64,000 nt of DNA from Mobula birostris (Eukaryota), in the NCBI RefSeq assembly GCF_030028105.1, contig NC_092373.1, positions 135,724,278 through 135,788,277 on the forward strand. Direction: 5' to 3'. The position numbers were made by a program, and so were the translations under genes. This document shows, one piece after another, positions 17,391 to 57,921 of the stretch. The first letter of the stretch is position 1, and each line of letters begins with the position of its first letter. The notes under the pieces were generated by a model, which was given only the letters and a program-made list of their open reading frames with translations, was not told where the DNA came from and ran no database searches.

Positions 17391-17468
17391 TGGTGTAAGG
17401 CAAACAGAAGACACAGAGGAAGAACCAGGCTGAATCAGAAAGGCAAGACGAAAAGACTCAAGCTCACA

Positions 17469-17532
17469 ATGAACTATAGCGTTAGCTTCATATTCTTGCT
17501 GCTCCTTGGAAATTATGCAGCTTTCTTTATGG
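17469..17532 (+). CDS. CXC chemokine exon 1 (signal peptide, 64 nt coding)
   Basis: MNYSVSFIFLLLLGNYAAFFM + G|GTGAG donor, phase 1. Confidence 0.88.
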
Positions 17533-19296
17533 GTGAGGAAAATACTCTACATTTTGAATTTCGTTGTCTTGATTAAGAATCAGCTTAATAGCACTCTGTT
17601 TAAGAAAAAATGCTGGTAACCTGCAATAACAGCAGAACATGTAACAAATACTCAACGGGTCAGTGAAATAGAGTTAGCATTTGTGGCCATGAGAAATGGA
17701 AAAATGTGAAAGTAAGTGTGTTTTAAGTAGAAATGAGGGAGAGAGTTCAAGAGAGCAAAGCAAATGCCTGCAAAAGAATGGAGACCATAAACTTAAAAGT
17801 TGTCCATAATAGACTTGACACTATTCTATTACATACATTTGCTTTGCTTTCCTATTTGTGGTTTAAACTTTGTGGATGTGAATACATAATCTATTTGATA
17901 TTTTGATGCAATACTGAGACCGCCACACTATAACAGTTGCCACATTTTGAGAGAGATGCTAAACCACAATAAATAGTTTCTCCAATTAACTCAATAAGCT
18001 CTGAAAATGCCATAAACATCTCAATTTGCTTCTCTTTCCAATTAGGAAGGTCCATACAACCGAGGTATGTACAAGTAGTCCGCAAAATTAATTCAATGAG
18101 CCTCATCATCAGGTGTATCTTTTAACTCTGCACTCAATCTGTTCTGAGAAAGCTAAGATCCCTGAGCAAACAACCTATATTTACTCCTATGGTTAGAACT
18201 GATATGACAGCTGATCCATAAACAGGAACAGATGTAGTGATATTCTGTACCATAAAGGATGCAGAAGGTACTTACTGGAATGGTTACAGGAATGATGCAT
18301 CTCAGAAAAAATAGTTAAATTGGAATGACTGGGCTTGTCAGTTTGGAGCAAGAAAGATTGAGAATTCTGCTAGAAGTGCACAATATTTCAGGTACAGGAC
18401 TTTCAACAAAACATCAAAAAAATCAATTTCGTCTGGGTCTCAGACCAATTTGGGACTACAGTGAGTTGATATGTTCAAATAATGTGACAATCAAGAGGCA
18501 ACTAAAACTGGATTCATCCAGTCTGTACAGTATGTTACCAGCAGGCCAGTCTATACAAAAAAAAGGGCAAAATAAAACGAATAGCAGACACAATTGGCCA
18601 GTGATTATGGCAATGGAAAGAAAGGTGAGCTTCACAAAGTTGAAACATTCACTGTTGAGTCATGTAGGCTACAAAGTGCACAGGCAGAAGTCGAGAAGTC
18701 TTTTCTCAAGCTTAACAATCAGTCTCATTGTAACAGTACAGAAAGTCATAGAGAAGGTCATATTACAAATACTGAACGCAATAAACCTCTATTATGGAAA
18801 ACAAATGTTTACAACATTTTATGCTTCATTTTACAGCTGCTCCTGTAAATGACAAGGTGAACTTAAAATGTCGGTGTGTGAAATATGAAAGTAAGGAGAT
18901 ACCCCGAAATCAGATCAGTAACATTGAAATCTTCAACATCAACGCAAATTGCCGCATTCCAGAGGTCATGTAAGAATTGTTCATGTACTTAAATACTCAT
19001 TCTTATATTTTATTGGGGCAATCCTGAAAATCTGGAAAAATTATGTGAATGATATTTGTATCTACAGATTATCTGTCAAAGGTAAAAGGGACAATCAAAA
19101 GAATTCTTTAAAAATTGACATTTTAAATCAAACAACATGGCAGTTCACCAAAAAAAATCAAAAAACTAAAGAGATAAAATTTTTCCTTCTTTCTTTCAGA
19201 GCTGATTTGAAGTCAGGCACTAAAGTCTGTTTACATGGGAAGAACAAGTGGGTGAAGGCTTTTATTGATGAATTACTGAAATCTACTTCAATGTAG
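17469..19296 (+). CDS. CXC chemokine, ELR-negative, 97 aa, 3 coding exons: MNYSVSFIFLLLLGNYAAFFMAAPVNDKVNLKCRCVKYESKEIPRNQISNIEIFNINANCRIPEVIADLKSGTKVCLHGKNKWVKAFIDELLKSTSM
   Basis: join(17469..17532,18837..18969,19200..19296); GT-AG introns, phases 1 and 2, frame intact. Signal peptide; C-x-C-x24-C-x15-C spacing as in CXCL8/CXCL10; Trp and C-terminal amphipathic helix. Orthology cannot be assigned by eye. Confidence 0.93.
18837..18969 (+). CDS. CXC chemokine exon 2 (133 nt; CRC motif and third Cys)
   Basis: TTTTACAG| acceptor; APVNDKVNLKCRCVK...NANCRIPEV; AT|GTAAG donor. Confidence 0.95.
19200..19296 (+). CDS. CXC chemokine exon 3 (fourth Cys, helix, stop)
   Basis: Polypyrimidine TTTTTCCTTCTTTCTTTCAG| acceptor; ADLKSGTKVCLHGKNKWVKAFIDELLKSTSM*. 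Confidence 0.92.
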
Positions 19297-21830
19297 AATA
19301 CCTTTTGAAGGACTTCAATGCTGCAACAATATCAAGAGGATATGAAACAGGCTCTCTAGCTATAAACTTTACCTTAATTGAAAGTCGTTAATTCTGGAAG
19401 AAGGACTGTATCTACAATATTAATAATGCTAAGCAAATGGCCTTCTAAATTAACATATGTTTTCCTAAATATAATACTGAATTGCCTTTCTCTTCTCTAT
19501 CAAGCAAAACCCTCCACCATAAACCCATAGAATGAGGATTGTAGCAGATTATTCTGTCCATTTATCCTTGATATTCGATTACTCACACTCTCGACTCTTC
19601 ATCTTCCTCCCATTCCCTCAAGACTCATTCATCTGCCACCCATTCCCTCACTTCAGCTGCTTTTCAAAACCACGCAGATTTCTCCATTTCTAAACTTCTT
19701 CCTAGAGCTTCAGTGAAAGTTACCATTTAATTTCCTTCTACTATATACTTTTCGGTAACACACTTTATATTAACAGCTTTCTCCCTTGTTTTGCATACGG
19801 TGCTTTTGCTAATTTCTTGAAATTGGTGCCCCCTTAGTTACTGACACTGCCACCGCTGGAAGCAGCTTTAGATTGCTTTTGTTATCATATACAGTAATTA
19901 ATGTTTCAAATCTCCCCATCCCTGTCTGTACAAGATGTACAAGATACTCCAGTTTCTCAATAAAACAGAAATTCCACAAATATTTCATTCTGTATTTCAG
20001 TAAAGGTACTACAGCTATTGGCAATTCAGGATGGAGATGAATGAATTACTATACCTTTCCTGATCTAATGACATTATGAATTCAAGAGCAAAAGACCACA
20101 GTCCTGCTCCAGCTTTTTCCAGCCACTGCTCCTTTCTTTTCTGTCATTTTCTGTTATTTCCCTTTTCTCTGCCAGTAACAGCACAAGAATTACTAAATTA
20201 ATGCACATATATAATGCTGGTAAATGGCCTTCACTTTGACAGTATGGCTTCATATAATTTTAAGCTATAAGCAATGTGGAGCAACAAGAAATATGCCTAG
20301 AAGCTTGCTGTATTTTCGATATGAAAACTTATGGATGTTTCAATAAACTGTTTTTGAATCCAGTTATTGTATCCTGGACATCATTTTGGAAAGAGACGGG
20401 GAGAGTGAACACAAGAATTAACTCAATTAGTCACAGAGCTGTACAAAACAGAAAGGCACCTTTCAGCCCATCACTTCCACACCATCCTGTGAAGGAGGGG
20501 AACTGTGTAGCCAGTGCAGAGTACATCTGCGGCCGTTCCCTCAATAATAATTATACAATTTCAGATACAATTGATGGGGAACAACCTACCGGGGGAGCCA
20601 CAGTGACTGAGCCTCTGGCGCTGAGTCTGGTGCTGTGGCTCAGAACAGCAGAGGGGTGAAGAGGACGGCAGTGTTGATAGGAGATTCCTTAGTCAGAGGA
20701 ACTGAGGTGAGGTTCCGTGGGTGTGATAGAGATACCTGGATGATATGTTGCCTCCCTGGTGCCAGGATCAGGGATGTCACAGATCGGGTCCTTGACATTC
20801 TCAAGGTGACAAGGTGAGGAGGTCCTGAAGAGAGATTTTAGGGAGCTAGGTAGGAAGCTGGGAAACAGGACCTCCAAGGTAGTAATCTCTGGATTGCTGT
20901 CTGTGCCATATGCCAGTGAGTGTAAGAATAGGATGCTTTGGCAGGTGAAGGTGTGGCTGAAGAACTGGTGCAGGGGACAGAGGTTCAGATTTCTGGATCA
21001 TTGGGATCTCTTCTGGGGAAGTTATGACCGGTACAAAAGTGTTGGGTTACACCTGGACCGCGGAGATCCAATATCCTTACGGGCAGGTTAGCTAGAGTTA
21101 TTGGGGTGTGTTTAAACTAATCTGGCAGGGAGATGGGAACTGAAATTTTAGTTTTGAAGATGAGGTAGTTGGTCTACAAATAGAGCCAATGGGTAGTGAG
21201 ACTCCTAGCAAGGAGAGGCTGATGATAGGGCAAAATTGCAGTCAACAGGATGAGCTGAAACATAAATTGCAGACAAAATTGAATAGGGTGAATACAGGAT
21301 TGCAGTTGTTATATTTGAATTTGTGCAGTATACAGAAGGTAGATGAATGTGTCGCACAGTTACAGATTGGCATGTATGATGCTGTAGCCATCACTGGATC
21401 ATGGCTGAAAGAAGATTACAGCTGGGAAGTTTATATCCAAGGATACACACTGTATCAAAAGTACAGGCAGAGAGGCGGTATTGCTCTGTTGGTAAAATTG
21501 AAATCAAATCATTAGGGTCAAAAGGTGTTGAATCATTGTGGATAGAGTTAAGGAACTGCAAGGATAAAAAGACCTTGATGGGAGTTGTATACAGAACCCA
21601 AACAGTAGTAAGGATGTGGCCTACAAATTACAATAAGAGATAGAAAATGCATGTCAAAAGGGCAATGTTATAATAGTCATGGGGGACTTCAATATGCAGG
21701 TAGATTGGGAAAATTAGATTGGTGCTGGATTCCAAGGGGGGAGTTTCTAGAATGCCTACGAGATGGCTTTTTAGAGCAACTCATGGTTGCGCTCACTAGG
21801 GGATCAGCTATTCTGGATTGGGTGTTGTGT

Positions 21831-22307
21831 GTTGGTTGTCCATGGTTTCCGACGATGACATAAACCTCTGCGGGAGGAGTTTTACGGTGGAAAAAGTAGT
21901 TGCACTGGGGCAGTTCCACTCTCTCGGTCTTAAAAATCTTGGTCCAAAGGTATGAAAAATCACCACGACTGGGGACTTCCTCGGCTGCAGTGGATGGCCA
22001 TGATGCCTTTTGTGCTTTGTCGTGCCCTTTGTTCTCCACAAAGTGTTGCAGCACCGCTTTCTTGGCCATTGGAAATGTAGTTGATCTCATCTGCCCAGTC
22101 CATCAGAACTGGCTTCGTATGCTGGGGTAAGCATATCCCTATCTCACTGGGGTGAAGTTTCCCAGCTACCCTCACCTGGCTTAGCCCGCCAGTCGACGTA
22201 GAGCCAGGGGGCAGGTGGGAACCAAAGGTGGACAGACTACCCTGGGCAGAGCATGACAAGCCCACCACCAGAGGTGCTATCCTTCCCTAGACACACCATA
22301 CACCCCA
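21831..22307 (-). mobile_element. Non-autonomous bipartite RTE-derived element (RTE 5' UTR fused to RTE 3' end), 477 bp
   Basis: TSD GGTGTT(G/A)TGT at 21821-21830 and 22308-22317. 5' part matches the 5' UTR of the RTE at 12240-12457. 3' end ...CATCGTCGGAAACCATGGACAACCAAC is RTE-like. Confidence 0.78.
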
Positions 22308-23148
22308 GGTGTTATGTAATGAACTGGAATTTGTTAGAGAGCTTAAGGTAAAAGAACCATTTGGGGCAAGTGATCATAATATGATTGAATTCACCCTGAG
22401 GAGAAAATAAAGTCAGATATTTCAGTATTACAGTGGAGTAAAGGAAATTACAGAGTCATGAGGAAGGAGTTGGCCACAATTGATTAGAAAAGAACAGTGG
22501 CAGGGATGGCTGGAAATTCTGGAAGTAATTCAGAAGGCACAGGATATATACATCCCAAAGAGGAAGCAGTATTTTAAAGGCAAGATGACACAACCGTGGC
22601 TAACAAGGGAAATCAAAGCCAACATAAAAGCCAAAGAGAGGGCATTTAATAGAGCAAAAATTAGTGGGAAGTTAGGAGATTGGGAAGCTTTTAAAAACCA
22701 ACAGAAGAAAGACAACTAAAAAAGTCATTAAGAAGGCAAAAACAGAGTACAAAAGAAAGCTAGCTTATAATATTAAAGAGGATACCAAATATTTCCTTGG
22801 ATACATAAAGTGTAAAAGAGAAGCGAGAGTGGATATTAGACCACTGGAAAACAATGCTCGAGAGATAGTAATGCAGGACAATGAAATAATGGACAAAAAG
22901 AAGTACTTTGCATCAGTCTTCACTGTGTAAGACAATAACAGTGTGGGGGAAGTTCCAGGTATCAGGGGTCATGAAGTGTGTGAAGTTACCATAACTAGAG
23001 AGAAGGTTCTTGGGAAACTGAAAGGTCTGAAGGTAGATAAGTCACCTGGACCAGATGGTGTACACCACAGAGTTCTGAAAGACATGGCTGAAGAGATTGT
23101 GGAGGCATTAAAGATCTTTCAAGAATCACTAGATTCTGGAGTGGTTCA

Positions 23149-24741
23149 TAGAAACATAGAAAATAGGTGCAGGAGTAGGTCATTCTGCCCTTCAAGCCTG
23201 TACCACCATTCAGTATGGTCATGGCTGATCATCCAACTCAGAACCCCGTACCAGCCTTCCCTCCATACCCCCTGATCCCTTTAGCCACAAGGGCCATATC
23301 TAACTCCCTCTTAAATATAGCCAATGAACTGGCCTCAACTGTTTCCTGTGGCAGAGAATTCCACAGATTCACCACTCTCTGTGTGAAGAAGTTTTTCCTA
23401 ATCTCGGTCCTAAAAGGCTTTCCCTTTATCCTCAAACTGTGACCCCTCGCTCTGGACTTCCCCAACATCGGGAACAATCTTCCTGCATCTAGCCTATCCA
23501 ATCCCTTTAGGATTTTATATGTTTCAATAAGATCTTCCCTCAATCTTCTAAATTCCTAATGAGTATAAGCCTAGTCGATCCAGTCTTTCATCATATGAAA
23601 GTCTTGCCATCCCAGGAATCAATCTGGTGAACCTTCTTTGTACTCCCTCTATGGCAAGGATGTCTTTCCTCAGATTAGGGGACCAAAACTGCACACAATA
23701 CTCCAGGTGTGGTCTCACCAAGGCCTTGTACAACTGCAGTAGCACCTCCCTGCTCCTGTACTCGAATCCTCTTGCTATGAATGCCAGCATACCATTCGCC
23801 TTTTTCACCGTCTGCTGTACCTGCATGCCCACTTTCCAATGACTGGTGTACAATGACACCCAGGTCTCGTTGCACCTCCCCTTTTCCTAATCGGTCACCA
23901 TTCAAATAATAATCTGTTTTCCTGTTTTTGCCACCAAAGTGGATAACCTCACATTTATCCACATTAAGTTGCACCTGCCATGAATTTGCCCACTCACCTA
24001 ATCTATCCAAGTCACCCTGCATCCTCTTAGCATCCTCCTCACAGCTAACACTGCTGCCCAGCTTCATGTCATCCGCAAACTTGGAGATGCTGCATTTAAT
24101 TCCCTCATCTAAATCATTAATATATATTTTAAACAACTGGGGTCCCAGCACTGAGCCTTGCGGTACCCCACTAGTCACTGCCTGCCATTCTGAAAAGGTC
24201 CCGTTTATTCCCACTCTTTGCTTCCTGTCTGCCAACCAATTCTCTATCCACATCAATACCTTACCCCCAATACCGCGTGCTTTAAGTTTGCACACAAATC
24301 TCCTGTGTGGGACCTTGTCAAAAGCCTTTTGAAAATCCAAATATACCACATCCACTGGTTCTCCCCTATCCACTCTACTAGTTACGTCCTCAAAAAATTC
24401 TATGAGATTCGTCAGACATGATTTTCCTTTCACAAATCCATGCTGACTTTGTCCGATGATTTCACCGCTTTCCAAATGTGCTGTTATCACATCTTTGATA
24501 ACTGACTCTAGCATTTTCCCCACCACCGATGTTAGGCTAACTGGTCTATAATTCCCCGGTTCCTCTCTCCCTCTTTTTTTAAAAAGTGGGTTACATTAGC
24601 CACCCTCCAATCCTCAGGAACTAGTCCAGGATCTAAGGAGTCTTGAAAAATTATCACTAATGCATCTACTATTTCTTGGGCTACTTCCTTAAGCAGTCTG
24701 GGATGCAGACCATCTGGCCCTGGGGATTTATCTGCCTTTAA
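23149..24741 (-). mobile_element. 5'-truncated, younger CR1 inserted into an older CR1
   Basis: 283-aa RT ORF 23675..24526 (SKFADDMKLG); 7-bp TSD TGGTTCA at 23142-23148 and 24742-24748. Confidence 0.92.
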
Positions 24742-26829
24742 TGGTTCAGAAAGACTGGAAAAGTGCAAATGTCACTCCACTCTTCAAGAGGGAGGGAGGC
24801 AGAAGAAAAGAAACTATAGGCCAGTCAGTCTGATATATCAGTGGAGTAAAGGAAATTACAGAGTCATGAGAGAGGAGTTGACCACAATTGATTAGAAGGT
24901 TGGAAAGATTTTGGAGTCAATTTGTAAGGATGTGGTTTCAGGTTACTTGGAGGCACATAATAAAATACAATAGACCATAGTCAGCATGGTTTCCTCAAGG
25001 GAAAATCTTGTCTGACAAATCTGCTGGAATTCTTTGAAGAAATAACAAGCACGATCGACAAGGGAGAATCAGCTGATGTTGTGTACTTGGATTTTCAGAA
25101 GACCTTTGACAAGGTACCAGACGTGAGTCTGCTTAACAGGCTATGAACCCATAGTATTACAGGAAAGATTCTAGCATGGATAAAGCAGTGGCTAACTGGC
25201 AGGAGGCAAAGAGTGGGAATAAAGGCAGCCTTTTCGGGTTGGCTGCTGGTGACAAGTGATGTTCCACAGGGCTCTGTGGTGGGACCGGTTCTTTTCACAG
25301 TTTAAGTTAATGATTTGGATGATGGATTTGTTGGCTTTGTTGCAAAATTTGTAGATGATATGAAGGTGGAGGGGCAGGTAGTTTTGAGGAAGTCGAGAGG
25401 TTACAGAAAGACTTAGGCAGATTAGGAGAATGGACAAAGAAGTGGCAGATGGAATACAGTGTATGGTCATGAACTTTGGTAAAGAATAAAAGGGTTGACT
25501 ATTTACTAAATGGAGAGAAAATACAAAAATCTGAGGTGCAAAGGGACTTGGGAGTCCTTGTGCAGGATACCCTAAGTGTTAATTTGCAGATTGAGTCTGT
25601 GGTGATGAAAGCGAATACAATGTTAGCATTCATTGCAAGAGGACAAAAATATAAAAGCAAGAATGTAATGTTCAGACTTTATAAAGCACAGCTGAGGCCT
25701 CACTTGGGAGTATTGTGAGTGGTTTTGAGCACCTTATCTTAGAAAGGATGTGTTGAAACTGGAGAGGGTTCGAAGAGGTTCACAAAAATGATTCCAGGGT
25801 TGAACAGCTTGTCATATGAAGAGTGTTTGATGGCTCTGGGCCTGTATACACTAAAAATCAGAAGAATGAGGGATGATTTCATATCAAATGGTGAAAGGCC
25901 TTGATAAAGTGGATGCGGAAAGGATGTTTCCTATGGTGGGAGAGTCTATGACCAGAGGACACAGCCTCAGCATAGAGGGCATCCTTTTAGAATGGAGATG
26001 AGGAGTAATTTCTTTAGCCAGATAGTAGTGAATCTGTGGAATTTGTTGCCCTAGGCAGTTTTGGAGGCCAAGTCGTTATGTATATTTAGGGCAGAGGTTG
26101 ATAGATTCTTGATTGGTCAGGGCATGAAGGGATATGGGGGCAAGGCAGGAGATCTTGTTGTCTCCCCAGCTCCTGAGACAACAAGCCTAGCCTTATCAAT
26201 CTCTCTTCATTATCGTAATTCTCCAGCCCAGATAACATCCTGGTGAAACCCTTCTTTACCTTTCCTGATGCAATCGTGTCCTTTGTAGAGTACTCACTAC
26301 TCCACCTGTATCCCTACTAAAGTACCATAATCTTACTGTTCTAATATTCTGTGCCCCAGTTACAGAAGGCAAGCATCCCATGGGCCTTCTTCACCATTTC
26401 ACTTCCTATGCTGCTACTTTCAGAGGTCCGCCATCTGTCCCTCAAAGCTCCCTAAAGCCCTGCCATTCATCATACATGTCCTACCATTACTTTTCCTTCT
26501 AAATATCAGCACTTCATATATAACAGCTTTTACTTCCATCAGTAATTCTTCCTGGCATGACAGCATCAGCTATTCTGATTGTATGAGAATCTACTGTTCA
26601 TCAAAGCTACAACAGCCTTGTTTAAAAGAACGTGAAAGTGGCAAGTGGTGTATAACCCCACCCTTACTCTGCACCTGGTCACGTTATAATTACGCAGAAT
26701 GGTGGAATACACCAGCCAACTTCGATAGTTACACTATATTGGGATATATGGCGGCACTGTATTAGATATACCGGTACGCCTACTTGTTAATCATTGTTAA
26801 TTAAGGGGCAGTGTTGGATCTTAATTGTT

Positions 26830-29175
26830 GGTTAAGTGTTGGATCTCCTGTTAGGGAATGAGACAGGGCAGGTGACGGAGGTATTTGTTGGGGAGCACTT
26901 CGGGTCCAGTGACCACAATACAATTAGTTTCAGAGTAATTATGGAGAAGGATAAGACTGGGCCTAGGATTGAGATTTTTGATTGGAGAAAGACTAACTCT
27001 GAGGAGATGCGAAAGGATTTAGAAGGAGTAGATTGGGAAAATTTGTTTTATGGGAAGGATGTAACAGAGAAATGGAGGTCATTTAAAGGTGAAATTTTGA
27101 GGGTTCAGAATCTTTATGTTCCTGTTAGGTTGAAAGGAAAGGTTAAAAGTTTGAGAGAGCCATGGTTTTCAAGAGATATTAGAAACTTGGTTCAGAAAAA
27201 GAGAGGGATCTTCAAAAAGTATAGGCAGCTTGGTGTTAATGAGGTACTCGAGGAATATAAAGAATGTAAAAAGAATCTTAAGAAAGAAATTAAAAAAGCT
27301 ATAAAGAGATACGAGGCTGCTTTGGCAAGTAAGGTGAAAATAAATCCAAAGGGATTCCACACTTATGTTAGTGGCAAAAGGATAGTGAGGGATAAAATTG
27401 GTCCCTTGGAGAATCAATGTGGATGGCTATGTGTGGAGCCAAAAGAGATGTGGGAGATTTTGAACAATTTCTTTTCTTCGGTATTCACTAAGGAGAAGGA
27501 TATTGAATTGTGTAAGGTAAAGGAAACAAGAACGGTAGTTATGGAAAGTATGACAATTATAGAAGAGGAAGTACTGGCACCTTTAAGGAATATAAAAGTG
27601 GATAAGTCTCCGGGTCCGGACAAGATATTCCCGAGGACCTTGAGGGAAGTTAGTGTAGAAATAGCAGGGGCTCTGACAGAAATATTTCAAATGTCATGAG
27701 AAACGGGGATGGTGTCGGAGGATTGGCATATTGCTCATGTGGTTCCATTGTTTAAAAAGGGTTCTAAGAGTAAACCTGGCAATTATCGGCCTGTGAGTTT
27801 GACATCAGTGGTGGGTAAATTGATGGAAAGTATTCTTAGAGATGGTATATATAATTATCTGGATAGACAGGGTCTGATTAGGAACGGTCAACATGGATTT
27901 GTACGTGGAAGGTCATGTTTGACAAATCTTATTGAATTTTTTGATGAGGTTACTAAGAAAGTTGACGAGGGTAAAACGCTGGATGTTGTCTATATGTTCT
28001 TCAGTAAGGCCTTTGACAAGGTTCCACACGGAGGGTTAGTTAGGAAGGTCCAATTGTTAGGCATTAATATGGAAGTAGTAAAATGGATTCAGCAGTGGCT
28101 AGATGGGAGACGGCAGAGAGTAGTGGTGGATAACTGTGTGTCAGATTGGAGGACGGTGTATAGCGGTGTGCCTCAGGGATCTGTACTGAGTCCAATGTTG
28201 TTTGTCATATATATTAATGATCTGGATGATGGGGTGGTAAATTGGATTAGTAAGTATGCAGATGATACTAAGATAGGTGGCGTTGTGGATGATGAGGTAG
28301 GTTTTCAAAACTTGCAGAGAGATTTAGGACAGTTAGAAGAGTGGGCTGAAAGATGGCAGGTGGAGTTTAATGCAGAAAAATGTGAGGTGCTATATTTTGG
28401 TAGGACTAATCAAAATAGGACGTACATGGTAAATGGTAGGGCATTAAAGAATGCTGTAGAACAGAGGGATCTAGGAATAATGGTGCATAGTTCCCTGAAG
28501 CTGGAATCTCATGTGGATAGGGTGGTGAAGAAAGCTTTTGGTTTGCTGGCCTTTATTAATCAGAGCATTGAGTATAGGAGTTGGGATGTAATGTTGAATT
28601 TGTATAAGGCATTGGTAAGGCCAAATCTGGAGTATTGCGTATAGTTCTGGTCACCGAATTATTGGAAAGATGCCAATAAAATTGAGAGAATACAGAGGAG
28701 GTTTACTAAAATGTTGCCTGGGTTTCATCTCCTAAGTTACAGAGAAAGGTTGAACAAGTTAGGTCTTTATTCTTTGGAGCGTAGAAGGTTGAGGGGGGAC
28801 TTGATAGAGGTGTTTAAAATTATGAGGGGGATTGATAGAGTTGCCGTGTTTAGACTTTTTCCATTGAGAGTGGGGAAGATTCAAACAAGAGAACATGAGT
28901 TGAGAGTTAAAGGGCAAAAGTTTAGGGGTAACATGAGGGGGAACTTCTTTACTCGGAGAGTGGTATCTGTGTGGAACGAGCTTCCAGTAGAAGTGGTTGA
29001 GGCAGGTTCGATGTTGTCGTTTAAAGTTAAATTGGATAGATATATGGATAGGAAAGGAATGGAGGGTTATGGGCTGAGTGCAGGTCGGTGGGACTAGGAT
29101 AGGGTAAGAGTTCGGCATGGACTAGAAGGGCCGGGATGGCCTGTTTCTGTGCTGTAATTGCTATATGGTTATATG
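26830..29175 (+). mobile_element. 5'-truncated CR1, the best-preserved copy in the window
   Basis: ORFs 26836..27699, 27709..28644 and 28711..29097 are all in one frame, split only by two nonsense codons; KYADDTKIGG; ATGGTTAT-type repeat tail. Confidence 0.93.
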
Positions 29176-29650
29176 GTTAATCAGCCAATCATCTGGCAGC
29201 AACTTCATGCATAAAAGCATGTCGACATGGTCAAGCAGTTCAGCTATTGTTCAAACCAAATCACAGAGTAGGAATAAATGTGATCTACGTGACTCTGACC
29301 ATGGAATAGTAATTGGTGCCAGACGGGGTGGTTTCAGTATCTCAGAAACTGCTGATCTCCTGGGATCTTCATGGACAGAAGGCTCTAGAGTTTGCAGAGA
29401 ATGATGTGAAAAGCAAAAAAAAAATCAATGAACGGCAGTTCTGTGGGTGAAAACACCTCGTTGATGAGAGAGGTCAGAGGAGAAGGGCCAGACTGGTTCA
29501 AGCCATGAGGAAGGCAACAGTAACTCAAATAACCATGTGTTAGAACAGTGGCATACAGAAGAGCTTCTCTAAACGCCAAGCATGTTGAACCTTGAAGTGG
29601 ATGGTCAACACCAGCAGAAGTCAATGACATGCACTCACCGTCCACATACA
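29176..29650 (+). mobile_element. Tc1/mariner transposase fragment (N-terminal HTH region)
   Basis: KCDLRDSDHGIVIGARRGGFSISETADLLG...SRVCRE followed by ERGQRR..RLVQA-type sequence. Confidence 0.8.
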
Positions 29651-44129: not shown

Positions 44130-46410
44130 TCTTCAGCATATAATCTGCAACAATAAGAACTACCTCCCCGACCATGCCCAGACTGCATTTCAGTAAATCT
44201 GATCACTTGTCTGATCTTCTCCTACCTGCATACAGGCAGAGGCTGAAGAGCAAAGCGCCAGAGATTTGGACAACAAGTAGGAGGCTGTGCGATACAGAGG
44301 AGCACCTATGGGATTGCTTTGAGTCTGTGGACTGGGCCATGTTCAAGGACTCATCTGTGGATCTGAATGAATACGCCATGGTTGTAACAGACTTTATTAA
44401 AAGAGTTGTAGACAAGCACGTACCACAAAGTCAGTCAGAGTCTTCCCCAGTCAAAAGCCCTGGAAGAACTACGAGATCTGCAGTCTGCTGAGGGCCAGAT
44501 CAGAAGCATTCAAGTCTGGTGACCGAGAAAGTTACGAGAGGTCCAGCACGATCTCTGGAAATCCATCCCTCGGGTAAAGTGGTAATTCCAGACTAAACTT
44601 GAATCAGTGATGGATGCTTGACATTTGTAGCAGGGCTTGAATACTATCACCTCTTATAAAATTAAATCAAGCAACATATGTGACAGCAGGGGTTTGTTTC
44701 CTGATGAGCTCAATGCCTTCTATGCGCACTTTGATTGTCAAAACATGGAGGAGCCATTACAAACTCCCACTGGCCTTGATGATCCCTGATTCCAGTCTCT
44801 GAAGCCATCTTGTGAGCAGCCTTCAGGAGGGTGAAGCCATGAAGAGCATCCAGCACAGATGGGATACCTGACCAAATACTAAAGACCTATGCTGATCAAC
44901 TGGCTGGAGAGTCCACTGAAATCCTTAACCTCTTGCTTTGACAGTCTGAGGCACCCACCTGCTTCAAGCAGGCTTCAATTATACCAGTGCCCAAGAAGAG
45001 CGTAGTGTCGTTCAATAGCACTGACATCCACAGTGATGAAGTGCTTAAGAGGCTGATGATGAAACATATCAACTCCTGCCTGAGAAGTGACTTAGATCTG
45101 CTCCAATTTGCCTACTGTAGAAACAGGTCCAAGGCAGACGCCATCTCGCTACCTCCTCACTCAACCCTGGAACATCTGGACGGAAAAGATGCATACATCA
45201 GGATGCTGTTTATCGACTACAGCTCACCATTCAATGCCATCATCACTTCAAAACTAACCAATAAGCTCCTAGACCTTGGCCTCAATACTTCCTTCAGTGA
45301 CTGGATCCTCGATTTCTTCACTTGCAGACCCCAGTCAGTTCAGATTGTCAACAACATCTCCTCCACGATCTCCATCAGCACAGGTGCACCACGGCCTGTG
45401 TGCTTAGCCCCCCCTCAACTCATTGTACACTTATGACTGTGTGGCTAAGCACAGATCCAATGCCATATTGTTTGCTGACGACACCAGTGTCGTAGGCTGA
45501 ATCAAAAGTGGTGATGAATCAGCATACAGGAGGGAAATTGAAAATCTGGCTGAGCAGTGCCACAACAACAACCTCTCACTCAATGTCAGCAAGACCGGGG
45601 GCTGATTATTGACTTCAGGAGAAGGAAAACAGAGGGCCATGAGCCAGTCCTCACTGGAGGATCAGCAACTTTAAAGTCCTTGGTGTTATTATTTCAGATG
45701 GCCTGTCCTGGACTCTGCATATATGTGAATTACAAAGAAAGCACAGCAGCACTTCTATTTCCTTAGGAGTTTGTGGAGATTTGGCATGACATCTAAAACT
45801 TTGACAAACTTATATAGATGTGCAGTGGAGAGAACATTGGCTGCACCAGAGCCTGTTATAGAAACAGCAATGCCCTTGAACAGAAAATCCTGGATATGTT
45901 CCAGTCCATCACAGGTAAAGCCCTCCCCACCATTGAGCACATCTACATGGAATATTGCCACAGGAAAGCAGCACCCGTCATCAGGAACCCCACCACCGGG
46001 ACATACTCTTTTCTCACTGTTGCTGTCAGGAAGAAGGTACAGGAGCCTTAGGGCTCACTCCACCAGGTTCAGGAACAGTTACTACCTCTCAACAATCAAC
46101 TTCTTGGACCAACTCACTCAACTTCACCTGTCCCATCATTGAAATGTTCCACAACCTCTCAAAGACTTTTCATCTCATCTTCTCAATATTTATTGCCTAT
46201 TTATTTATTTATTATTATTTCTTTCTTTTTGTATTTGCGTAGTTTGTTGTCTTTTGCACACTGCTCGAACATTCAAGTCGGTGTGGTCTTTCATTGATTC
46301 TATTAGAATTACTATTCTATAGAATTATTGAGTATGCCCACAAGAAAATGAATCTCAGGGTTGTATATGGTGACATATATGTACTTTGATAATAAATTCA
46401 GTTTGAACTT
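44130..46410 (+). mobile_element. Rex1/Babar LINE (EN end, RT, 3' UTR)
   Basis: LQFAYCRNRSKADAI...YIRMLFIDYSSPFNAI (44987..45436); FADD-like motif at ~45470; tail AAGAAAATGAATCTCAGGGTTG...GATAATAAATT. Confidence 0.88.
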
Positions 46411-46519
46411 CGGACTTTCATATTTCATCCCACCAGTGGGACTCTATTGCTCCCTGCACTGCATAGAACCACACCAGCATTTTCCTACTCAGGAAAAAAA
46501 ACTCTTTGTAAGATATAGA

Positions 46520-46650
46520 ATTGTGGTTAAGTAAGTGTCTGAATTAATTTCAGATGCACCCTTTTGTCTTTTAAAATCTCCCTATTCAAAAGCAAGAGAG
46601 CTCGCATCTGGTTTCTGTACTGAAACTACTTCTTAAAATAGAACTGAAAA
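46520..46650 (+). promoter_or_regulatory. Candidate JCHAIN proximal promoter motifs: RUNX TGTGGTT, E-boxes CAGATG (46551) and CATCTG (46605), MEF2-like CTTAAAATAG (46632-46641), ISRE-like GAACTGAAA (46641-46649)
   Basis: Short motif matches clustered in the only unique sequence upstream of the ATG; not statistically tested. Confidence 0.3.
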
Positions 46651-46787
46651 TGATCTGGAGCTCTTTGAAGAAACAAATCACAAAACAGGCAAAATGGGTT
46701 GGTCTTTCATTTTGCTGAAGCTCACAAATCAGTCTAGGTGAGCACCGAGGGCACAAGAGGAGGATCGAGGAAGCTGACACTCCAGCT

Positions 46788-46851
46788 ATGAAGATCAAGC
46801 AAATGCTGAGACCTTTTGCAGCAATTCTCCTTTTCACTGTTCTTGTAACAG
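46788..46851 (+). CDS. JCHAIN: JCHAIN exon 1 (signal peptide, 64 nt coding)
   Basis: MKIKQMLRPFAAILLFTVLVT + G|GTGTGA donor, phase 1. Confidence 0.85.
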
Positions 46852-49800: not shown

Positions 49801-52800
49801 CTGTCTGCTGTTTTATAGCCAATGCTGAAAGCCATCTTCTAGTTAAATCAAAATGTAAGTGCCTGACTGTGACGTCCAAAACAGTTGTTACCGAATTGCC
49901 TACTGGTGAACGTGTGGAGCAGCTTATGAGAGATATAAGAATTATGTAAGTAAATGCATTTTAATTTGATGATCACACTGCCTTATGCTAATTTTTGCTA
50001 CTAATTAGAAAGTGGTTGCAGATAATTTCGTTACTGTGGGTCACTGAATTAGTTTATCAGACGGAATCAGATCACATCCCCACATCTAACAATCGTTTTA
50101 TTTCCAAAATGAACATGGAAGCTTGAAAACTATAAAAGCTAAGATTCATTTCTAAGTGCAAGAACTCCATTGTTAACTTCCAGTAGGAAGAGAAGCATTA
50201 GTTAAGGTCCATTTATTAAAGTTGGTGCCTTTTTCACATAACTGTTGCTGCATTAAGCTAAAAACTGTATGTAGTGGTATCTGTAGTGAAGATATCTCAC
50301 ATAATGAATAGTTAGTTGTCGTTGCTGGGCAAAGAGCAGTCTATGAGCAATTCACAGGCTGAGTAGTGACTATAAGAAATACTGGGCTCATGGAAATGAA
50401 TAGACACCATCAACCCACATGTGGAAGTCTTATCTATCCCCAAAGGCACTAACGTAATGTGATTCCTATTTATTTCTTGACAACTATTTTATCTAAATTT
50501 CTCGAAATTGTTTCTAGATATTGAGATAATTAATTCATGTGCTGACATAAAAGCCTGCTGTGTATCCTTTTCTGGAGCAACCTTATGTCATCCAAAACTG
50601 ATTAATGTTCAACTTGATGTAATCATGCATCAGTTAAGTTTGCAAATTAACTGATGCAATAGATATGCTATTGTTATTGTTATTGCTACGTAGCTGATTA
50701 TTTTAGTTATTGACTGTTTCCTTTAATTAACAACATTACCCTAACCACATCAGCAATGATCTGTGCAGAATGATGGCAGGGCATTTAATTGCCTATCTCC
50801 AGCACTCCTAAAATGACTGCCAATTGTTCTTTTATTACAGCGTTCCTATGAGGAGCAGAGTGAACATGTCAGATCCAACCTCCCCTATTCGGACGAAGTT
50901 CGTCTACAAGATTTCTGATTTGTATGAAATTTATTTTTGTCTCTTTTTTTGCAATATATATTTAGAACGGGTTTCAGAATACACCCTACACCTGGCATCT
51001 GGTGTTTGTACTTCAATATATAGCACGCATGGTGTAACTAGGCCTGCTCAAGGCATGGCAGGTTACTCAGAAATGAATGGATAGCGAGGGCAGCACAGTG
51101 GAGTAATTAGTAGAGATGCTGCTGTGTTCTGCGTTTATTCCTCACCTCCAGTGCTGTTTTGTGGAGTTTGTACTTTCTCCTTGTAGCCAAGTGGAATCCA
51201 GGTTGGGAGACCATAAGACGTTGGAGTGGAATAAGACCAGCTGGCCCATCGAGTCTGCTCCATCATTCAATCATGGTGATCCTTTTTTTCATCTCCTCAT
51301 CAACCCCTGTTCCCAGCCTTCACCCTGTAACCTTTGATGCCATGTCCAATCAATAACCTATCAATCCCTGTCTTAAATACACCCAACGACCTGGCCCCCA
51401 CAGCTGTATATGGCAACAAATTCCACAAATTCAGCAGCCTTTGGCTAAAGAAATTTCTCCACATCTCTGTTTTGAAAGGGCACCCCTCTATCCTGATGTT
51501 GTGCCCTTTTGTCCTCGACTCCCCCACTATGGAAAACATCCCTTCCACATCGACTCTGTCTAGGCCTTTCAACATTCGAAAGGTTTCAATGAGATCCCCC
51601 GTCATCCTTCTGAATTCCAGTGAGTACAGAGCCATCAAAAGTTCCTCATATGATAACGCTTTCATTTCTGGAATCTTCCTTGTGAACCTCCTCTGGACCC
51701 TCTTCAATGCCAGCACATCTTTTCTAAGATGAGGGGCCCACAACTGTTCACAATACTCAAGGTGAGGCTCACCAGTGCCTTATAACGCCTCAGCATCACA
51801 TCCTTGCTCTTGTATTATAGACCTCTTGAAATGAATGCTAACATGGCATTTCCCTTCCTCACCACCAACTCGACCTGCAAGTTAATCCTTAGGGTGTTCT
51901 GCACAAGGACTCCCAATTCCTGGATTTTCTCCATGTTTAGAAAATAGTCTGCACATTTATTTCTACTATCAAAGTACATAACCATGCATTTTTCAACATT
52001 GTATTTCATTTGCCACTTTCTTACCCATTCTCCTAATCTATCTAAGTCCTTCTGCATCCTACCTGTTTCCTCAACACTACCTGCCCATCCACTAATCTTC
52101 ATATCATCTGCAAACTTGGCAACAAAGCCATCTATTCCATCATCCAAATCATTTATATACAGCATAAAAAGAAGTGGTCCCAACACTGACCACCAACACC
52201 ACTAGTCACTGGCAGCCAACTAGAAAAGGATCCTTTTATTCCCACTCGCTGCCTCCTACCAATCAGCCAATGCTCTAACCATATTAGTAACTTGCCTGTA
52301 ATATCATGGGCTCTTAACTTGGTGAGCAACCTCATGTGTGGCACCTTGTCAAAGGCCTTCTGAAAGTCCAAATATACAACATCCACTGCATCCCCTTTAT
52401 CTTTCCTACTTGTAATCTCCTCAAAGAATTCCAACAGATTTGTCAGGCAGGATTTTCCCTGAAGGAAACCATGCTGACTTTGTACTTACTACCTTTGCGG
52501 TCCTATATCCACTCTTATTTCTCTTTTATTTTTAACATACTTGAAAAAACTTCTAATATCCACTTTGATATTATTTGCTAGCTTGCTTTCATATTTCATC
52601 TTTTTCCTTCTAATGATTTTTTTAGTTGCTCTCTGCAGGTTTTTAAAAACTTCCCAATCCTCTACCTTCCTACTAATTTTTACCATGGTTGTGCTATTTT
52701 ATCATTCAAGTATTTCTTCATTTTTGGAATACACATGTCCTGCACCTTCCTCATTTTTCCCAGAAACGCACACCATTGCTGCTTTGCTGACAACCCTGCC

Positions 52801-55800: not shown

Positions 55801-57921
55801 TAAAGGAGTACAGAGATGTAGGACTGTAATGTAATTTTCCTTTAAACCTATAAGGATGCAGGCGTACACTGAATAGGGATATAGGAAGGGCAAAGAGAGC
55901 CTTGGCAGATAAGATAAAGGAAATTCATAACAGATTCTTTAACTATAACAAAGCAGTAACCAAAAAGAGAGTAAGATCCCCTTAAATATCAGTGTTCATC
56001 TATGGTGGAGCCATGAGATATGGACAATGTCTTAAGTCAATAGTTCCTGTCTGTATTTACCATGGAGAAGGTCGAGCAAGCTAGGGATTTCAGGGAAGAG
56101 AGCCAGAATGTCCTGAAACATATTGCTACCATGAAGGAGAAGGTGTTAGTAGATTTAAAGGTGAATAAATCCCTGGGGCCCGACCAAGTGGACATTTTAG
56201 GAATACAGGAATTTGCTAAGGCCCTGGCAGAGGTAGATATATCAGCATTGGGCTACAGCTGATTTTTTTACCCAAAAAAAAGGCTGTAAGGACAACCCAA
56301 TGAACTACAGGTGAAAAGCCAAACATCAGCAGTGGTAAAGTTACTGGAAGGAATTCCAACAGACAGGACTAGCTGCGTGGGTAAAAGAGAGGACTGATTT
56401 GAAATAGGTAATATGGTTTGTGCATGGAACAGTGTGTCTCAATTTGATTAAGTTTATTGAAAAGGAAACCAAGGGAATTGACAAAAGCAGGGCAGTAGAA
56501 GTTGTCTACGTGGACTTTCGCAAGGCTTTCACAGAGGCCCTGTGTGGTAGACTGGTCTGGCAGGTTAGATCACATGGAATCCAGGGTGAGCTAGCCAACT
56601 GGATACAGAATTTGCTTGTTGGTAGTAATCCAAAGATGAAAGTGGAGATTGTTTTTTTTAGTTTGGAGACAAGTGACCAGTGGCGTGCCGCAAAGATTGG
56701 CGCTGGGTTCCTTATTGCTGGCGGTTATATTATCAATTTGGATGACAGTGTAGTTGGAATAGTAAGCAAGTCTGCGGATGACACCAGAATTGGTGGCATG
56801 GTGAACAGTGAAGAAAGTTACCTAACATCACAACAAAATCAAGATAAACTGGGAAAATAGGCCAAGGACTGGCAGATGAAAGTGATGCATTTTGGGAAGT
56901 TTAACCAGAGCAGAACATACAGGCCAGAGGACTGGGTAGCGTAAGAGAATAAAGAGGCCGAGGGGGACAAATACATACCTCCCTGAAAGCGGTGACACAG
57001 ATAAATGAGGTTGTGAAGGAGGCATTTGGCATACTTACCTTCATCAGTCAGGACTTGGGATGTCACGTTAGAGCTGTAGAAAACTTTGAAACTGTACAGT
57101 GTGCAAATCTGGTACGTAGCTATAGACAAAATGTCATTACATTGAAGATTCACGGGGATATAACTGGGATTGGATCATGAGAAGAGAGTGGATAGGCTGG
57201 GGTTGTTTTCTCTGGCGTGTAGGAGGCCGAGGGTGACCTTTACAAGATCACGAGGGGCAAAGATAAAATGAATGCTCCGAGCCCTTTTCCCAGGGTGAGG
57301 GGAGTCTAAAAGTAGAGGGGAAAGATTTAGTGTGAAATGACAAAGATTTAAAGGAGGCCTAAGGATCACATTTTCCACACGGATGGCTGTGGGAATATTG
57401 AACAAGTTGCCAGAGGAAATGACAAAGGTGGGCACAATAACATTTGAAAGAAAGACAGGTACGTGAATAGGAAAGGGTTAGAGGGATATGGGCAACTGGG
57501 GCTAGCTCAGGTAGGCAACGTGTTTGGCCTGGACAAATTGGGGAGAAAAGAGCCTGCTTCAGTGCAGTAGAACTTTATAACTCTCTGAGAACACACTGTG
57601 ATTTTCAGAAGACAGCATTTCAAGTGCAATGGAAATTACATCTCTAATCAAATATTTTGTTACAGCTGCAAGAACTGCAACCAAGAACGAACCTTGCCTG
57701 GAGAACCCGAGTGCAAGCCCCCACCTCCTCCTGCAGATACCTGTTACAGCCGTCCCAGCACATGCCTGCACCAAACAATCGACATGGGAAATGGCATAAA
57801 AATGGACGCTATTCAGAATCCTGAGTGTCTCAACTATAAACCAAAACACTGGATCCCAAAGCCTACACTGACTCCTATTGAAACTACACGAGATTTTGCT
57901 TCCATGTCAGATGCTCCTTAG
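46788..57921 (+). CDS. JCHAIN: Immunoglobulin J (joining) chain, 175 aa, 4 exons: MKIKQMLRPFAAILLFTVLVTANAESHLLVKSKCKCLTVTSKTVVTELPTGERVEQLMRDIRIIVPMRSRVNMSDPTSPIRTKFVYKISDFCKNCNQERTLPGEPECKPPPPPADTCYSRPSTCLHQTIDMGNGIKMDAIQNPECLNYKPKHWIPKPTLTPIETTRDFASMSDAP
   Basis: join(46788..46851,49819..49945,50841..50921,57666..57921); GT-AG introns, phases 1/2/2, frame intact. The block RDIRIIVPMRSRVNMSDPTSPIRTKFVY matches human RNIRIIVPLNNRENISDPTSPLRTRFVY, including the N-glycosylation sequon. KCKC and all 8 Cys present; exon sizes 64/127/81 versus human 64/124/81. Confidence 0.96.
47590..49220 (+). mobile_element. Old, heavily decayed CR1 in JCHAIN intron 1
   Basis: Recognisable CR1 ORF2 remnants and a 3' tail (AAAAGGCCTACTTTTGCTTCAATTTCTTATG). 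Confidence 0.65.
49819..49945 (+). CDS. JCHAIN: JCHAIN exon 2 (127 nt, KCKC)
   Basis: TTTTATAG| acceptor; NAESHLLVKSKCKC...MRDIRI; AT|GTAAGT donor. Confidence 0.95.
50841..50921 (+). CDS. JCHAIN: JCHAIN exon 3 (81 nt, NMS glycosylation site)
   Basis: TTTTATTACAG| acceptor; VPMRSRVNMSDPTSPIRTKFVYKISD; TT|GTATG donor. Confidence 0.97.
51208..53475 (-). mobile_element. CR1 LINE in JCHAIN intron 3
   Basis: ORFs 51300..51743, 51815..52186 (VAKFADDMKI), 52153..52434 and 53134..53397 (EN). Confidence 0.9.
53557..53733. repeat. Fold-back palindrome of two head-to-head Penelope-type terminal repeats
   Basis: Left arm GCAAACACATACAAAATGCTGAAGGAACTCAGC...TCAGGCAGCATC is the reverse complement of the right arm GACGCTGCCTGA...CTCCTCCAGAATTTGGTGTGTGTTGC. 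Confidence 0.8.
54099..54654 (+). mobile_element. Penelope-like element remnant: GIY-YIG C-terminal fragment between inverted pseudo-LTRs
   Basis: CIRLGYPEEVAVAEHCIRNGHRINFDGTK...KEAIE...NFNKDE at ~54310-54490; 54099-54225 is the reverse complement of 54526-54654. Confidence 0.78.
55790..57585 (+). mobile_element. Old CR1 in JCHAIN intron 3, ending ~80 bp before exon 4
   Basis: ORF 56420..56860 (VYVDFRKAF...VSKSADDTRIGG) and a CR1 tail. Confidence 0.8.
57666..57921 (+). CDS. JCHAIN: JCHAIN exon 4 (six Cys plus C-terminal extension)
   Basis: TTTTGTTACAG| acceptor; CKNC...C...TCY...C...C pattern; TAG stop at 57919-57921; AATAAA at 58412 and 58612. Confidence 0.92.

What the first reader, a model, noticed from the sequence alone, without database searches (positions are those of the whole stretch)
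17469..57921. CXC chemokine and JCHAIN in tandem with mirror-image exon architecture
Seen in sequence: both genes are on the + strand, 27.5 kb apart, with only retroelements and a ~3 kb unique island between them. Both have a 64-nt phase-1 signal exon. Exon 2 is 133 versus 127 nt, with Lys-Cys-x-Cys starting at offset 32 versus 35. Both exon 2s end on a split Ile codon AT|GTAAG (phase 2). Established knowledge (recalled; verify): J chain has been proposed to be a co-opted CXCL chemokine linked to the CXCL cluster (Kawasaki, Ohta, Castro and Flajnik, PNAS 2024), so the linkage is not itself new. Inference: this window shows an adjacent CXCL-JCHAIN pair in a basal gnathostome, and the neighbouring chemokine is a candidate closest surviving paralogue of the duplication that produced J chain.
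Basis: partly seen in the sequence, partly recalled or inferred. Interest (0 to 1): 0.85.

Follow-up and report, generated by a model that had tools for sequence, protein, structure and literature searches.

The report
Manta ray IL-8-like chemokine beside JCHAIN
An expressed interleukin-8-like chemokine gene lies 27.5 kb upstream of the immunoglobulin J-chain gene in the giant manta ray and shares its exon layout, but a 2024 paper already described this arrangement for cartilaginous fish, and nothing here shows this chemokine is J chain's closest relative.

Summary
Two + strand genes lie 27,491 bp apart, with only decayed retroelements between them.

- **Chemokine gene:** a 97-aa CXC chemokine at 17469-19296.
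- **J-chain gene:** JCHAIN at 46788-57921. Its protein is identical to NCBI's "immunoglobulin J chain-like [Mobula birostris]".

Kawasaki et al. (PNAS 2024) already reported that in sharks, rays and chimaera jchain lies downstream of cxcl genes, next to CXCL8-like genes, and shares the phase 1-2-2 layout and the CXC position. This window is one more instance of that.

The neighbour is CXCL8-like: its profile hits human IL-8 best. It has three exons rather than four, with the stop codon in exon 3. It was not found in the protein collections searched.

The "closest surviving paralogue" claim is not supported. Similarity to J chain is weak (hhalign P about 0.001-0.003) and rests on the CXC block. 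Bowfin and catshark chemokines score as high as the manta neighbour.

The scan had not reported this arrangement on other DNA. The finding is real but mostly known, so interest is low to moderate.

The parts
17469..17532 (+). CXCL8-like chemokine, exon 1 coding part (signal peptide; 64 nt; phase-1 donor GG|GTGAGG). The 5'UTR starts somewhere in about 17400-17450. A TATAAG lies at 17383-17388.
   Evidence: Sequence. An RNA contig junction joins 17532 to 18837 with GT..AG ends. Depth begins in the bin 17350-17451. The TATA box and transcription start are inferred.
18837..18969 (+). Chemokine exon 2 (133 nt). It encodes NLK-C-R-C and the third Cys, and ends on a split Ile codon AT|GTAAG (phase 2).
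   Evidence: Pfam IL8 PF00048 scores 25 bits against a cut-off of 21.3. RNA junctions on both sides are confirmed.
19200..20294 (+). Chemokine exon 3, the last exon. The CDS runs to the stop at 19294-19296 and holds the fourth Cys and the K-W-V motif. An unspliced 3'UTR of about 1 kb follows. AATAAA signals lie at 19959 and 20342.
   Evidence: Contigs run unbroken from 19200 to 19704 and on to 20294 with no joint. Pfam IL8 scores 18.3 bits for the exon-3 piece.
20360..46700 (.). Intergenic interval made of decayed retroelements, with no other cellular gene detected. LINE RT ORFs lie at 23678-24526 (-), 26836-28641 (+), 31288-31626 (-) and 44987-45433 (+). A gag zinc knuckle plus protease remnant lies at about 34.2-35.1 kb (+). 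An LTR-element remnant with integrase, RT, protease and gag lies at about 39.8-43.8 kb (-). A 94-bp tandem array lies at 42584-43147.
   Evidence: Pfam RVT_1 at 1e-28 to 8e-32; Asp_protease, DUF4939 and Integrase_H2C2 as weak hits. ORF translations. Tandem repeats. No CXCL or J-chain exon by tblastn. NCBI calls no gene within 10 kb of JCHAIN.
46788..46851 (+). JCHAIN exon 1 coding part (signal peptide; 64 nt; phase 1). Transcript 5' ends lie at about 46722-46739.
   Evidence: Sequence. A junction joins 46851 to 49819 with GT..AG ends. Contig starts are preceded by sequencing-adaptor letters at 46722 and 46739.
49819..49945 (+). JCHAIN exon 2 (127 nt). It encodes K-C-K-C and ends on a split Ile codon AT|GTAAG (phase 2).
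   Evidence: Pfam Ig_J_chain PF15097 scores 22.6 bits.
50841..50921 (+). JCHAIN exon 3 (81 nt, phase 2). It encodes the conserved DPTSPIRTKFVYKISD block.
   Evidence: RNA junctions are confirmed. The loose end behind 50921 equals the start of exon 4. Pfam PF15097 scores 36.6 bits.
57666..58430 (+). JCHAIN exon 4. The CDS runs to the stop TAG at 57919-57921 and encodes six Cys and the elasmobranch-type C-terminal extension ending SDAP. The 3'UTR follows, with AATAAA at 58412.
   Evidence: Sequence. The spliced protein is identical to P0001, NCBI 'immunoglobulin J chain-like [Mobula birostris]', 175 aa. The gene span of 11,134 bp matches the record. Runs hold 0.68-0.87 of this stretch's words.

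Best explanation
The window is from the giant manta ray (Mobula birostris). It shows the 3' edge of the CXCL8-like ('cluster A') chemokine region followed by JCHAIN, as already described for cartilaginous fish.

The upstream gene encodes a secreted, basic CXC chemokine of 97 aa. The mature part is about 75 aa with pI about 9.2. It has four cysteines, NLK in place of ELR, and a K-W-V motif. It is transcribed and spliced from three exons.

The downstream gene is the ordinary four-exon J chain, which joins polymeric IgM. Its mature form has 8 Cys and pI about 8.6.

The shared layout is the family-wide CXCL/JCHAIN layout, and it fits J chain's origin from a CXCL gene by tandem duplication in the gnathostome ancestor. 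The shared features are a 64-nt phase-1 signal exon, a CXC motif early in exon 2, and a phase-2 Ile at the exon 2/3 boundary.

- **Shown here:** the gene models, their expression, the chemokine's subfamily, and the absence of other genes between them.
- **Inferred:** chemotactic function through a CXCR1/2-type receptor, and the common ancestry itself.
- **Not shown:** any special closeness of this particular chemokine to J chain.
For: - **Gene models and splicing:** searches give the exons. Spliced contigs confirm all five junctions.
- **Species and J-chain identity:** the window protein equals P0001 from Mobula birostris, and the 11,134-bp gene span matches. Pfam PF15097 hits exons 2 and 3. 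A profile of 14 chondrichthyan J chains hits solved J chains at 1e-29.
- **Chemokine identity:** Pfam IL8 hits both exon pieces. A profile of the manta pieces plus their nearest relatives hits human IL-8 best, at 76 bits. CXCL5, 6 and 7, PF4 and CXCL1-3 follow, then CXCL13 at 60, CXCL10 and 9 at 48, and CXCL12 at 34.
- **Published arrangement:** PMC10801876.
- **Weak direct similarity to J chain:** hhalign gives P 0.0013 and 0.0034. It aligns CXC with CXC and the split Ile with the split Ile. None of 300 column shuffles reached the real score.
Against: - The chemokine has three exons rather than four and lacks ELR, so it is not a textbook CXCL8.
- Its function was not tested.
- The runs are only guessed to be RNA. 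Intron-free GT..AG junctions make RNA by far the likeliest reading.
- The profile similarity to J chain depends on the CXC block, which is the feature that prompted the comparison.
- Synteny in other species could not be re-examined here, because no vertebrate DNA was served. That part rests on the paper.
Confidence: 0.85

Rival explanations
1. One reading: this neighbouring chemokine is the direct surviving descendant of the CXCL gene whose tandem duplicate became J chain. On this view it is J chain's closest living paralogue.
For: - It is the immediate upstream neighbour on the same strand, with no gene between.
- It shares the 64-nt phase-1 exon, and its CXC motif sits one codon from J chain's.
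- Both exon 2s end on a split Ile.
- Pairwise local alignment over the exon-2 peptides gives p about 0.002 against shuffles.
Against: - Against the J-chain profile the manta gene scores 18.5. Bowfin domain 2 scores 20.9 and catshark domain 3 scores 20.8. Bowfin has no J chain at all.
- The CXCL profile without the manta sequence scores the same.
- The signal disappears once the CXC block is removed.
- These architectural features are reported as shared by most CXCL genes.
- In sarcopterygians JCHAIN adjoins cluster B, not cluster A, so adjacency has been reshuffled by inversions.
- CXCL clusters turn over by gene birth and death.
- The gene has lost intron 3, so in that respect it is derived.
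Confidence: 0.1
2. The resemblance is coincidental. J chain is not derived from a chemokine, and the shared exon sizes, phases and CXC motif are chance features of small secreted-protein genes that happen to be linked.
For: - Ordinary HMM searches with the J-chain profile find no chemokine in the PDB sequences, even at E up to 10.
- hhalign probability is only 9-18%.
- Beyond the CXC block nothing is significant.
- The disulfide patterns differ completely.
Against: - The paper reports that, in the human secretome, only JCHAIN and CXCL genes combine four exons, phases 1-2-2 and a CXC motif in exon 2. It also reports that the linkage holds in all gnathostomes that have JCHAIN.
- Here the profile alignment places both the CXC motif and the exon-boundary Ile in register, with a net gap of three codons. 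That equals the observed difference in distance from the first Cys codon to the end of exon 2, 101 nt against 92 nt.
- None of 300 column shuffles reached the score.
Confidence: 0.05

Closest known systems
CXCL-JCHAIN linkage in chondrichthyans (Kawasaki, Ohta, Castro and Flajnik, PNAS 2024; PMC10801876)
   Same: - jchain lies downstream of a cxcl gene in the same orientation.
- The neighbour is CXCL8-like (cluster A).
- The signal exon ends in phase 1 and exon 2 ends in phase 2.
- The CXC motif sits at an equivalent place in exon 2.
- The J chain is basic to neutral (pI 8.6 here).
   Different: - Whether this species was in their data set is unknown, because the supplementary tables are not held.
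- The neighbouring chemokine here has three exons, with no intron 3. The paper says most CXCL genes have four.
- Nothing else differs in kind.
Human CXCL8 (IL-8) and the ELR+ CXC chemokines of cluster A
   Same: - Best profile hits are IL-8 at 76 bits, then CXCL5, 6 and 7, PF4 and CXCL1-3.
- It has four Cys with CXC spacing.
- It has a W-V motif in the C-terminal helix.
- The mature protein is basic.
   Different: - NLK replaces ELR before the first Cys.
- The stop codon lies in exon 3, so the gene has three exons.
- The nearest full-domain relatives found are only 35-46% identical: bowfin and cloudy catshark gene models that fuse two or three CXCL domains.
Immunoglobulin J chain (Pfam PF15097), elasmobranch type
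   Same: - The protein is identical to the annotated Mobula birostris protein.
- It is 87% identical to Hypanus sabinus and 74% to Pristis pectinata.
- It has eight Cys and the conserved exon 2-3 core.
- It has four exons with phases 1-2-2.
   Different: - The exon-4 part does not match the Pfam model, which is largely tetrapod-based.
- The C-terminus carries an extension ending SDAP, shared with other elasmobranchs and the chimaera.
- This C-terminal difference is already known for shark J chain.

Membership tests
CXC chemokine (IL8-like, Pfam PF00048) | Match to the family profile | tested here: met
   The exon-2 piece scores 25.0 bits against a cut-off of 21.3. The exon-3 piece scores 18.3 bits and covers profile positions 39-60.
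CXC chemokine (IL8-like, Pfam PF00048) | Four conserved cysteines, the first two as C-x-C, after a cleavable signal peptide | tested here: met
   The translation has C-R-C, then Cys in NANC and Cys in KVC, after a hydrophobic 21-residue N-terminus. The cleavage site itself was not predicted.
CXCL8-like / cluster A subgroup | Closest to IL-8 and other ELR+ chemokines rather than to CXCL9-14 | tested here: met
   Profile A2 against PDB sequences: IL-8 76 bits, CXCL13 60, CXCL10 48, CXCL12 34. The profile includes bowfin and catshark relatives, so it classifies the small group, not the manta sequence alone.
CXCL8-like / cluster A subgroup | ELR motif before the first Cys, and a WV motif | tested here: inconclusive
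   NLK replaces ELR. K-W-V is present. From general knowledge, not checked here, fish CXCL8-like genes often lack a strict ELR.
CXCL gene architecture (Kawasaki 2024) | Four exons with intron phases 1-2-2 | tested here: not met
   Phases 1 and 2 are present. However, RNA contigs run unspliced from 19200 through the stop to about 20294, so the gene has three exons. The paper says 'most', not all, CXCL genes have four.
Immunoglobulin J chain (PF15097) | Match to the family profile and to known J chains | tested here: met
   PF15097 scores 22.6 and 36.6 bits on exons 2 and 3. The protein is 100% identical to the NCBI Mobula birostris J chain. Profile A1 hits solved J chains at 1e-29.
Immunoglobulin J chain (PF15097) | Four exons with phases 1-2-2, and eight cysteines | tested here: met
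   RNA junctions confirm the exons. Exon lengths are 64, 127 and 81 nt plus the terminal exon. The mature protein has 8 Cys.
   hhalign scores against the J profile are manta 18.5, bowfin domain 2 20.9, catshark domain 3 20.8 and catshark domain 1 18.9. The panel was small, and no tree could be built for lack of sequences.
The paper's supplementary tables are not held.

The most novel reading that the evidence does not exclude
The manta CXCL8-like gene may be more than a bystander at the cluster edge. It could share a regulatory neighbourhood with JCHAIN and be co-expressed with it in lymphoid or plasma-cell tissue. It could also be the least-changed descendant of the gene that gave rise to J chain. 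In that case it would be a living model of the pre-J-chain chemokine. The only support here is anecdotal: both transcripts occur as spliced, very deep contigs in the same two runs, X2 and X1.
Probability: 0.1. Interest if true: 0.6.

Novelty: new member of a known kind. Interest (0 to 1): 0.27.

Why it matters
The origin of J chain from a CXCL chemokine is a recent and striking proposal, and cartilaginous fish are the key lineage for it. This window adds a clean, RNA-supported example in a batoid.

- The nearest upstream gene to JCHAIN is a single CXCL8-like gene with the same signal-exon length, the same phases, and a split Ile at the same boundary.
- A targeted profile-profile comparison puts the CXC motif and that Ile in register.

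That is modest corroboration, not a new insight. The linkage, the architecture and the CXCL8-like neighbourhood are all published.

Two practical points come out of it. The chemokine gene appears to be missing from the protein collections searched, although it shows very deep contigs. It has also lost the usual third intron.

Tried and rejected
1. **Word-indexed protein search.** A search with the stop-free stretch around chemokine exon 2 found no candidate.
2. **Exhaustive phmmer search.** The 43-aa exon-2 piece gave only three hits, at about 39 bits. One is a repetitive 672-aa protein and is spurious. The other two are fused multi-CXCL gene models from bowfin and cloudy catshark. A broad CXCL panel and a phylogeny were therefore out of reach.
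3. **Full-length chemokine as a query.** The spliced 97-aa chemokine has no reference form, so it was never sent whole to the database tools. Only its exon pieces were used.
4. **Neighbouring DNA in other species.** The look-up of encoding contigs for the J chains of Mobula, Hypanus and Scyliorhinus torazame returned gene spans but no DNA. The Callorhinchus protein is not on record. Cross-species synteny was not tested.
5. **Structure prediction.** AlphaFold2 on the manta J chain with 14 aligned sequences gave mean pLDDT 45. This is too poor for a fold search, so none was run.
6. **Possible chemokine pseudogene.** A cluster of weak tblastn hits to the chemokine at 34534-34938 looked like one. 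Reading the sequence showed a retroelement gag zinc knuckle and a protease remnant. blastn with the mRNA found nothing there. The idea was rejected.
7. **PDB search with exon 2 alone.** It gave only marginal hits to PF4 and CXCL13, E 0.025-0.07. This was superseded by the profile search.
8. **Supplementary tables.** Those of PMC10801876 are not held.
9. **Promoter motifs.** A scan found nothing beyond single ETS- and C/EBP-like words. No weight is placed on them.


Full report
**What is in the sequence**

Reading the window at the stated coordinates and translating the proposed exons gives two + strand genes.

| Gene | Exon | Coordinates | Length | Boundary |
|---|---|---|---|---|
| Chemokine | 1 (coding part) | 17469-17532 | 64 nt | donor GG\|GTGAGG, phase 1 |
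| Chemokine | 2 | 18837-18969 | 133 nt | ends AT\|GTAAG, phase 2 |
| Chemokine | 3 | from 19200 | stop at 19294-19296 | last exon |
| JCHAIN | 1 (coding part) | 46788-46851 | 64 nt | phase 1 |
| JCHAIN | 2 | 49819-49945 | 127 nt | ends AT\|GTAAG, phase 2 |
| JCHAIN | 3 | 50841-50921 | 81 nt | phase 2 |
| JCHAIN | 4 | 57666-57921 | stop TAG at 57919-57921 | last exon |

- The chemokine product is 97 aa. It has a hydrophobic N-terminus, the motif NLK-C-R-C, two further cysteines and a K-W-V motif. The mature part is basic, pI about 9.2.
- The JCHAIN product is 175 aa. The mature protein has eight cysteines and pI about 8.6.
- In both genes the split codon at the end of exon 2 is Ile, ATA in the chemokine and ATC in JCHAIN.
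- The first Cys codon starts at 0-based offset 32 in chemokine exon 2 and 35 in JCHAIN exon 2.
- The chemokine stop and the JCHAIN ATG are 27,491 bp apart.

**Transcript evidence**

Public runs of one coded organism hold both genes. They are kept as assembled contigs, and their RNA status is a guess by the tool.

For the chemokine:
- A single 684-nt contig lies on 17487-17531, 18836-18969 and 19200-19704 with no mismatches. Both skipped parts have GT..AG ends.
- Further contigs tile to about 20294 without any joint.
- The gene is therefore spliced from three exons. The stop codon and a 3'UTR of about 1 kb lie in exon 3. There is no third intron, unlike most CXCL genes.

For JCHAIN:
- The joints 46851 to 49819 and 49945 to 50841 are GT..AG.
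- A 1083-nt contig from a second coded organism, with four base differences, spans exons 1 to 3.
- The loose end behind 50921 reads the first 30 bases of exon 4.
- Contig 5' ends preceded by adaptor letters put the transcript start near 46722-46739.

Intron-free contigs at very high word depth make RNA the only reasonable reading. Depths were not used to rank expression, as the tool advises.

**Identity of the genes and the species**

- Pfam's Ig_J_chain model hits JCHAIN exons 2 and 3. It does not hit exon 4.
- The exon-4 stretch retrieved a 175-aa protein named "immunoglobulin J chain-like [Mobula birostris]". This protein is identical to the spliced window protein.
- The recorded gene span of 11,134 bp equals 46788-57921, and no other gene is called within 10 kb on either side. 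The window is therefore giant manta ray.
- Thirteen other chondrichthyan J chains were collected and aligned. The profile finds the solved tetrapod J chains at 1e-29 and nothing else of note.
- The chemokine's two exon pieces hit Pfam IL8 at 25 and 18 bits.
- Its nearest relatives in an exhaustive search are two gene models that fuse tandem CXCL domains, one from bowfin and one from cloudy catshark. They are 35-46% identical to it.
- A profile of the manta pieces plus those domains ranks human chemokines as follows: IL-8 first at 76 bits, then CXCL5, 6 and 7, PF4 and CXCL1-3, then CXCL13 at 60, CXCL10 and 9 at 48, and CXCL12 at 34. The gene is thus CXCL8-like, that is 'cluster A'.
- Neither search found the manta protein itself or a close orthologue. 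The J chain from the same assembly is present. The gene is therefore probably unannotated, although I could not look up the exact 97-aa sequence.

**What lies between and around**

- The 26 kb between the genes holds several LINE reverse-transcriptase and endonuclease ORFs on both strands.
- It also holds a gag zinc knuckle with a protease remnant at about 34.2-35.1 kb.
- An LTR-element remnant with integrase, RT, protease and gag lies at about 39.8-43.8 kb, next to a 94-bp tandem array.
- The 17 kb upstream of the chemokine is likewise LINE-derived.
- tblastn and blastn with both products found no further chemokine or J-chain exon.
- A cluster of weak hits near 34.5-34.9 kb proved to be the retroelement just mentioned.

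**Comparison with what is known**

Kawasaki, Ohta, Castro and Flajnik (PNAS 2024, PMC10801876) report the following.
- JCHAIN is linked to CXCL clusters in all gnathostomes that have it.
[quoted passage not shown] - Chondrichthyan J chains are neutral to basic.

The paper also infers that jchain adjoins cluster A in chondrichthyans but cluster B in sarcopterygians, because of lineage-specific inversions.

**Test of the "closest surviving paralogue" inference**

*Pairwise alignment.* The manta chemokine and J chain share only V-x-x-K-C-x-C-x-x-x-x-S-K. The p-value is 0.002 for the exon-2 peptides and 0.015 for the longer segments, against 5000 shuffles. The signal peptides show nothing.

*Profile against profile.*
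- The small CXCL8-like profile against the N-terminal J-chain profile scores 21.2, P 0.0013, probability 18%.
- With the full J-chain alignment, P is 0.0034.
- The alignment puts CXC on CXC and the exon-boundary Ile on the exon-boundary Ile. Its net gap of three codons equals the real difference in distance from the first Cys codon to the end of exon 2, 101 nt against 92 nt.
- None of 300 column shuffles reached the score: mean 10.2, SD 2.3, maximum 18.6. The reversed profile scored 10.7.

*Limits of that signal.*
- With the CXC block removed, the same register returns at only P 0.06-0.12. The signal therefore rests largely on the motif that motivated the comparison.
- Scored singly against the J profile, the manta neighbour gets 18.5. 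That is no better than bowfin domain 2 at 20.9, catshark domain 3 at 20.8 or catshark domain 1 at 18.9.
- The profile without the manta sequence scores 20.3.

The data are compatible with family-level kinship. They give no support for a special relationship of this particular gene.

**Limits**

- No vertebrate DNA other than the window could be fetched.
- The paper's supplementary tables are not held.
- The CXCL panel was six domains.
- The AlphaFold2 model of the J chain was too poor to use, with mean pLDDT 45.
- Function (chemotaxis, receptor) is inferred from family membership only.

**Verdict**

This is a real, RNA-supported CXCL8-like gene next to JCHAIN in a manta ray. It is a new example of a published arrangement. 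Two small additions are the three-exon structure of the chemokine and its probable absence from current annotation.

Noticed in passing
window 17469-20294: The CXCL8-like gene has very deep spliced contigs in two runs. Yet neither it nor any close orthologue turned up in the 5.8-billion-protein word search or in the exhaustive search of 1.84 billion representatives. The J chain from the same assembly is present. The gene is probably unannotated in the manta ray.
   Followed up: partly
window 19200-19296: There is no intron 3. At the point where a phase-2 donor would sit, 84 nt into exon 3 at about 19283, there is no GT, and the frame reads on for four codons (S-T-S-M) to the stop. This could be loss of the donor with read-through, or clean loss of the intron. 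Which one was not resolved.
   Followed up: no
alignment A1 (J chains P0001-P0014), around residues 34-36 of the window protein: The second Cys of the J-chain C-x-C is replaced by Leu (K-C-K-L) in the galeomorph sharks: Cetorhinus, Mustelus, Rhincodon and two Scyliorhinus species. It is kept in the rays and skates, in Heptranchias and Pristiophorus, and in the chimaera. Pristiophorus and Callorhinchus also lack the Cys in D-F-C-K.
   Followed up: no
window 57829-57921: The C-terminal tail beyond the last Cys is shared by most elasmobranch J chains and ends in an SDAP that is also present in the chimaera. Pfam's J-chain model does not cover exon 4.
   Followed up: partly
window 48261-48562 (JCHAIN intron 1): A segment of about 300 bp attracts hundreds of contigs at 95-99% identity from all four runs, including one that is probably DNA. 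Many different flanks run off both ends. It behaves as a high-copy interspersed repeat, SINE-like.
   Followed up: no
window 1-239, 14031-14764 and 42584-43147: Three sets of tandem arrays are present. A 27-bp G-rich unit lies at the window start. Units of 36, 64 and 68 bp lie upstream of the chemokine. A 94-bp unit repeated six times lies inside the LTR-element remnant.
   Followed up: no
P0016 (Amia ocellicauda, 217 aa) and P0017 (Scyliorhinus torazame, 249 aa): Both public gene models carry two or three complete CXC chemokine domains in a single protein. They are most likely tandem CXCL genes merged by automatic annotation, not true multi-domain chemokines.
   Followed up: no
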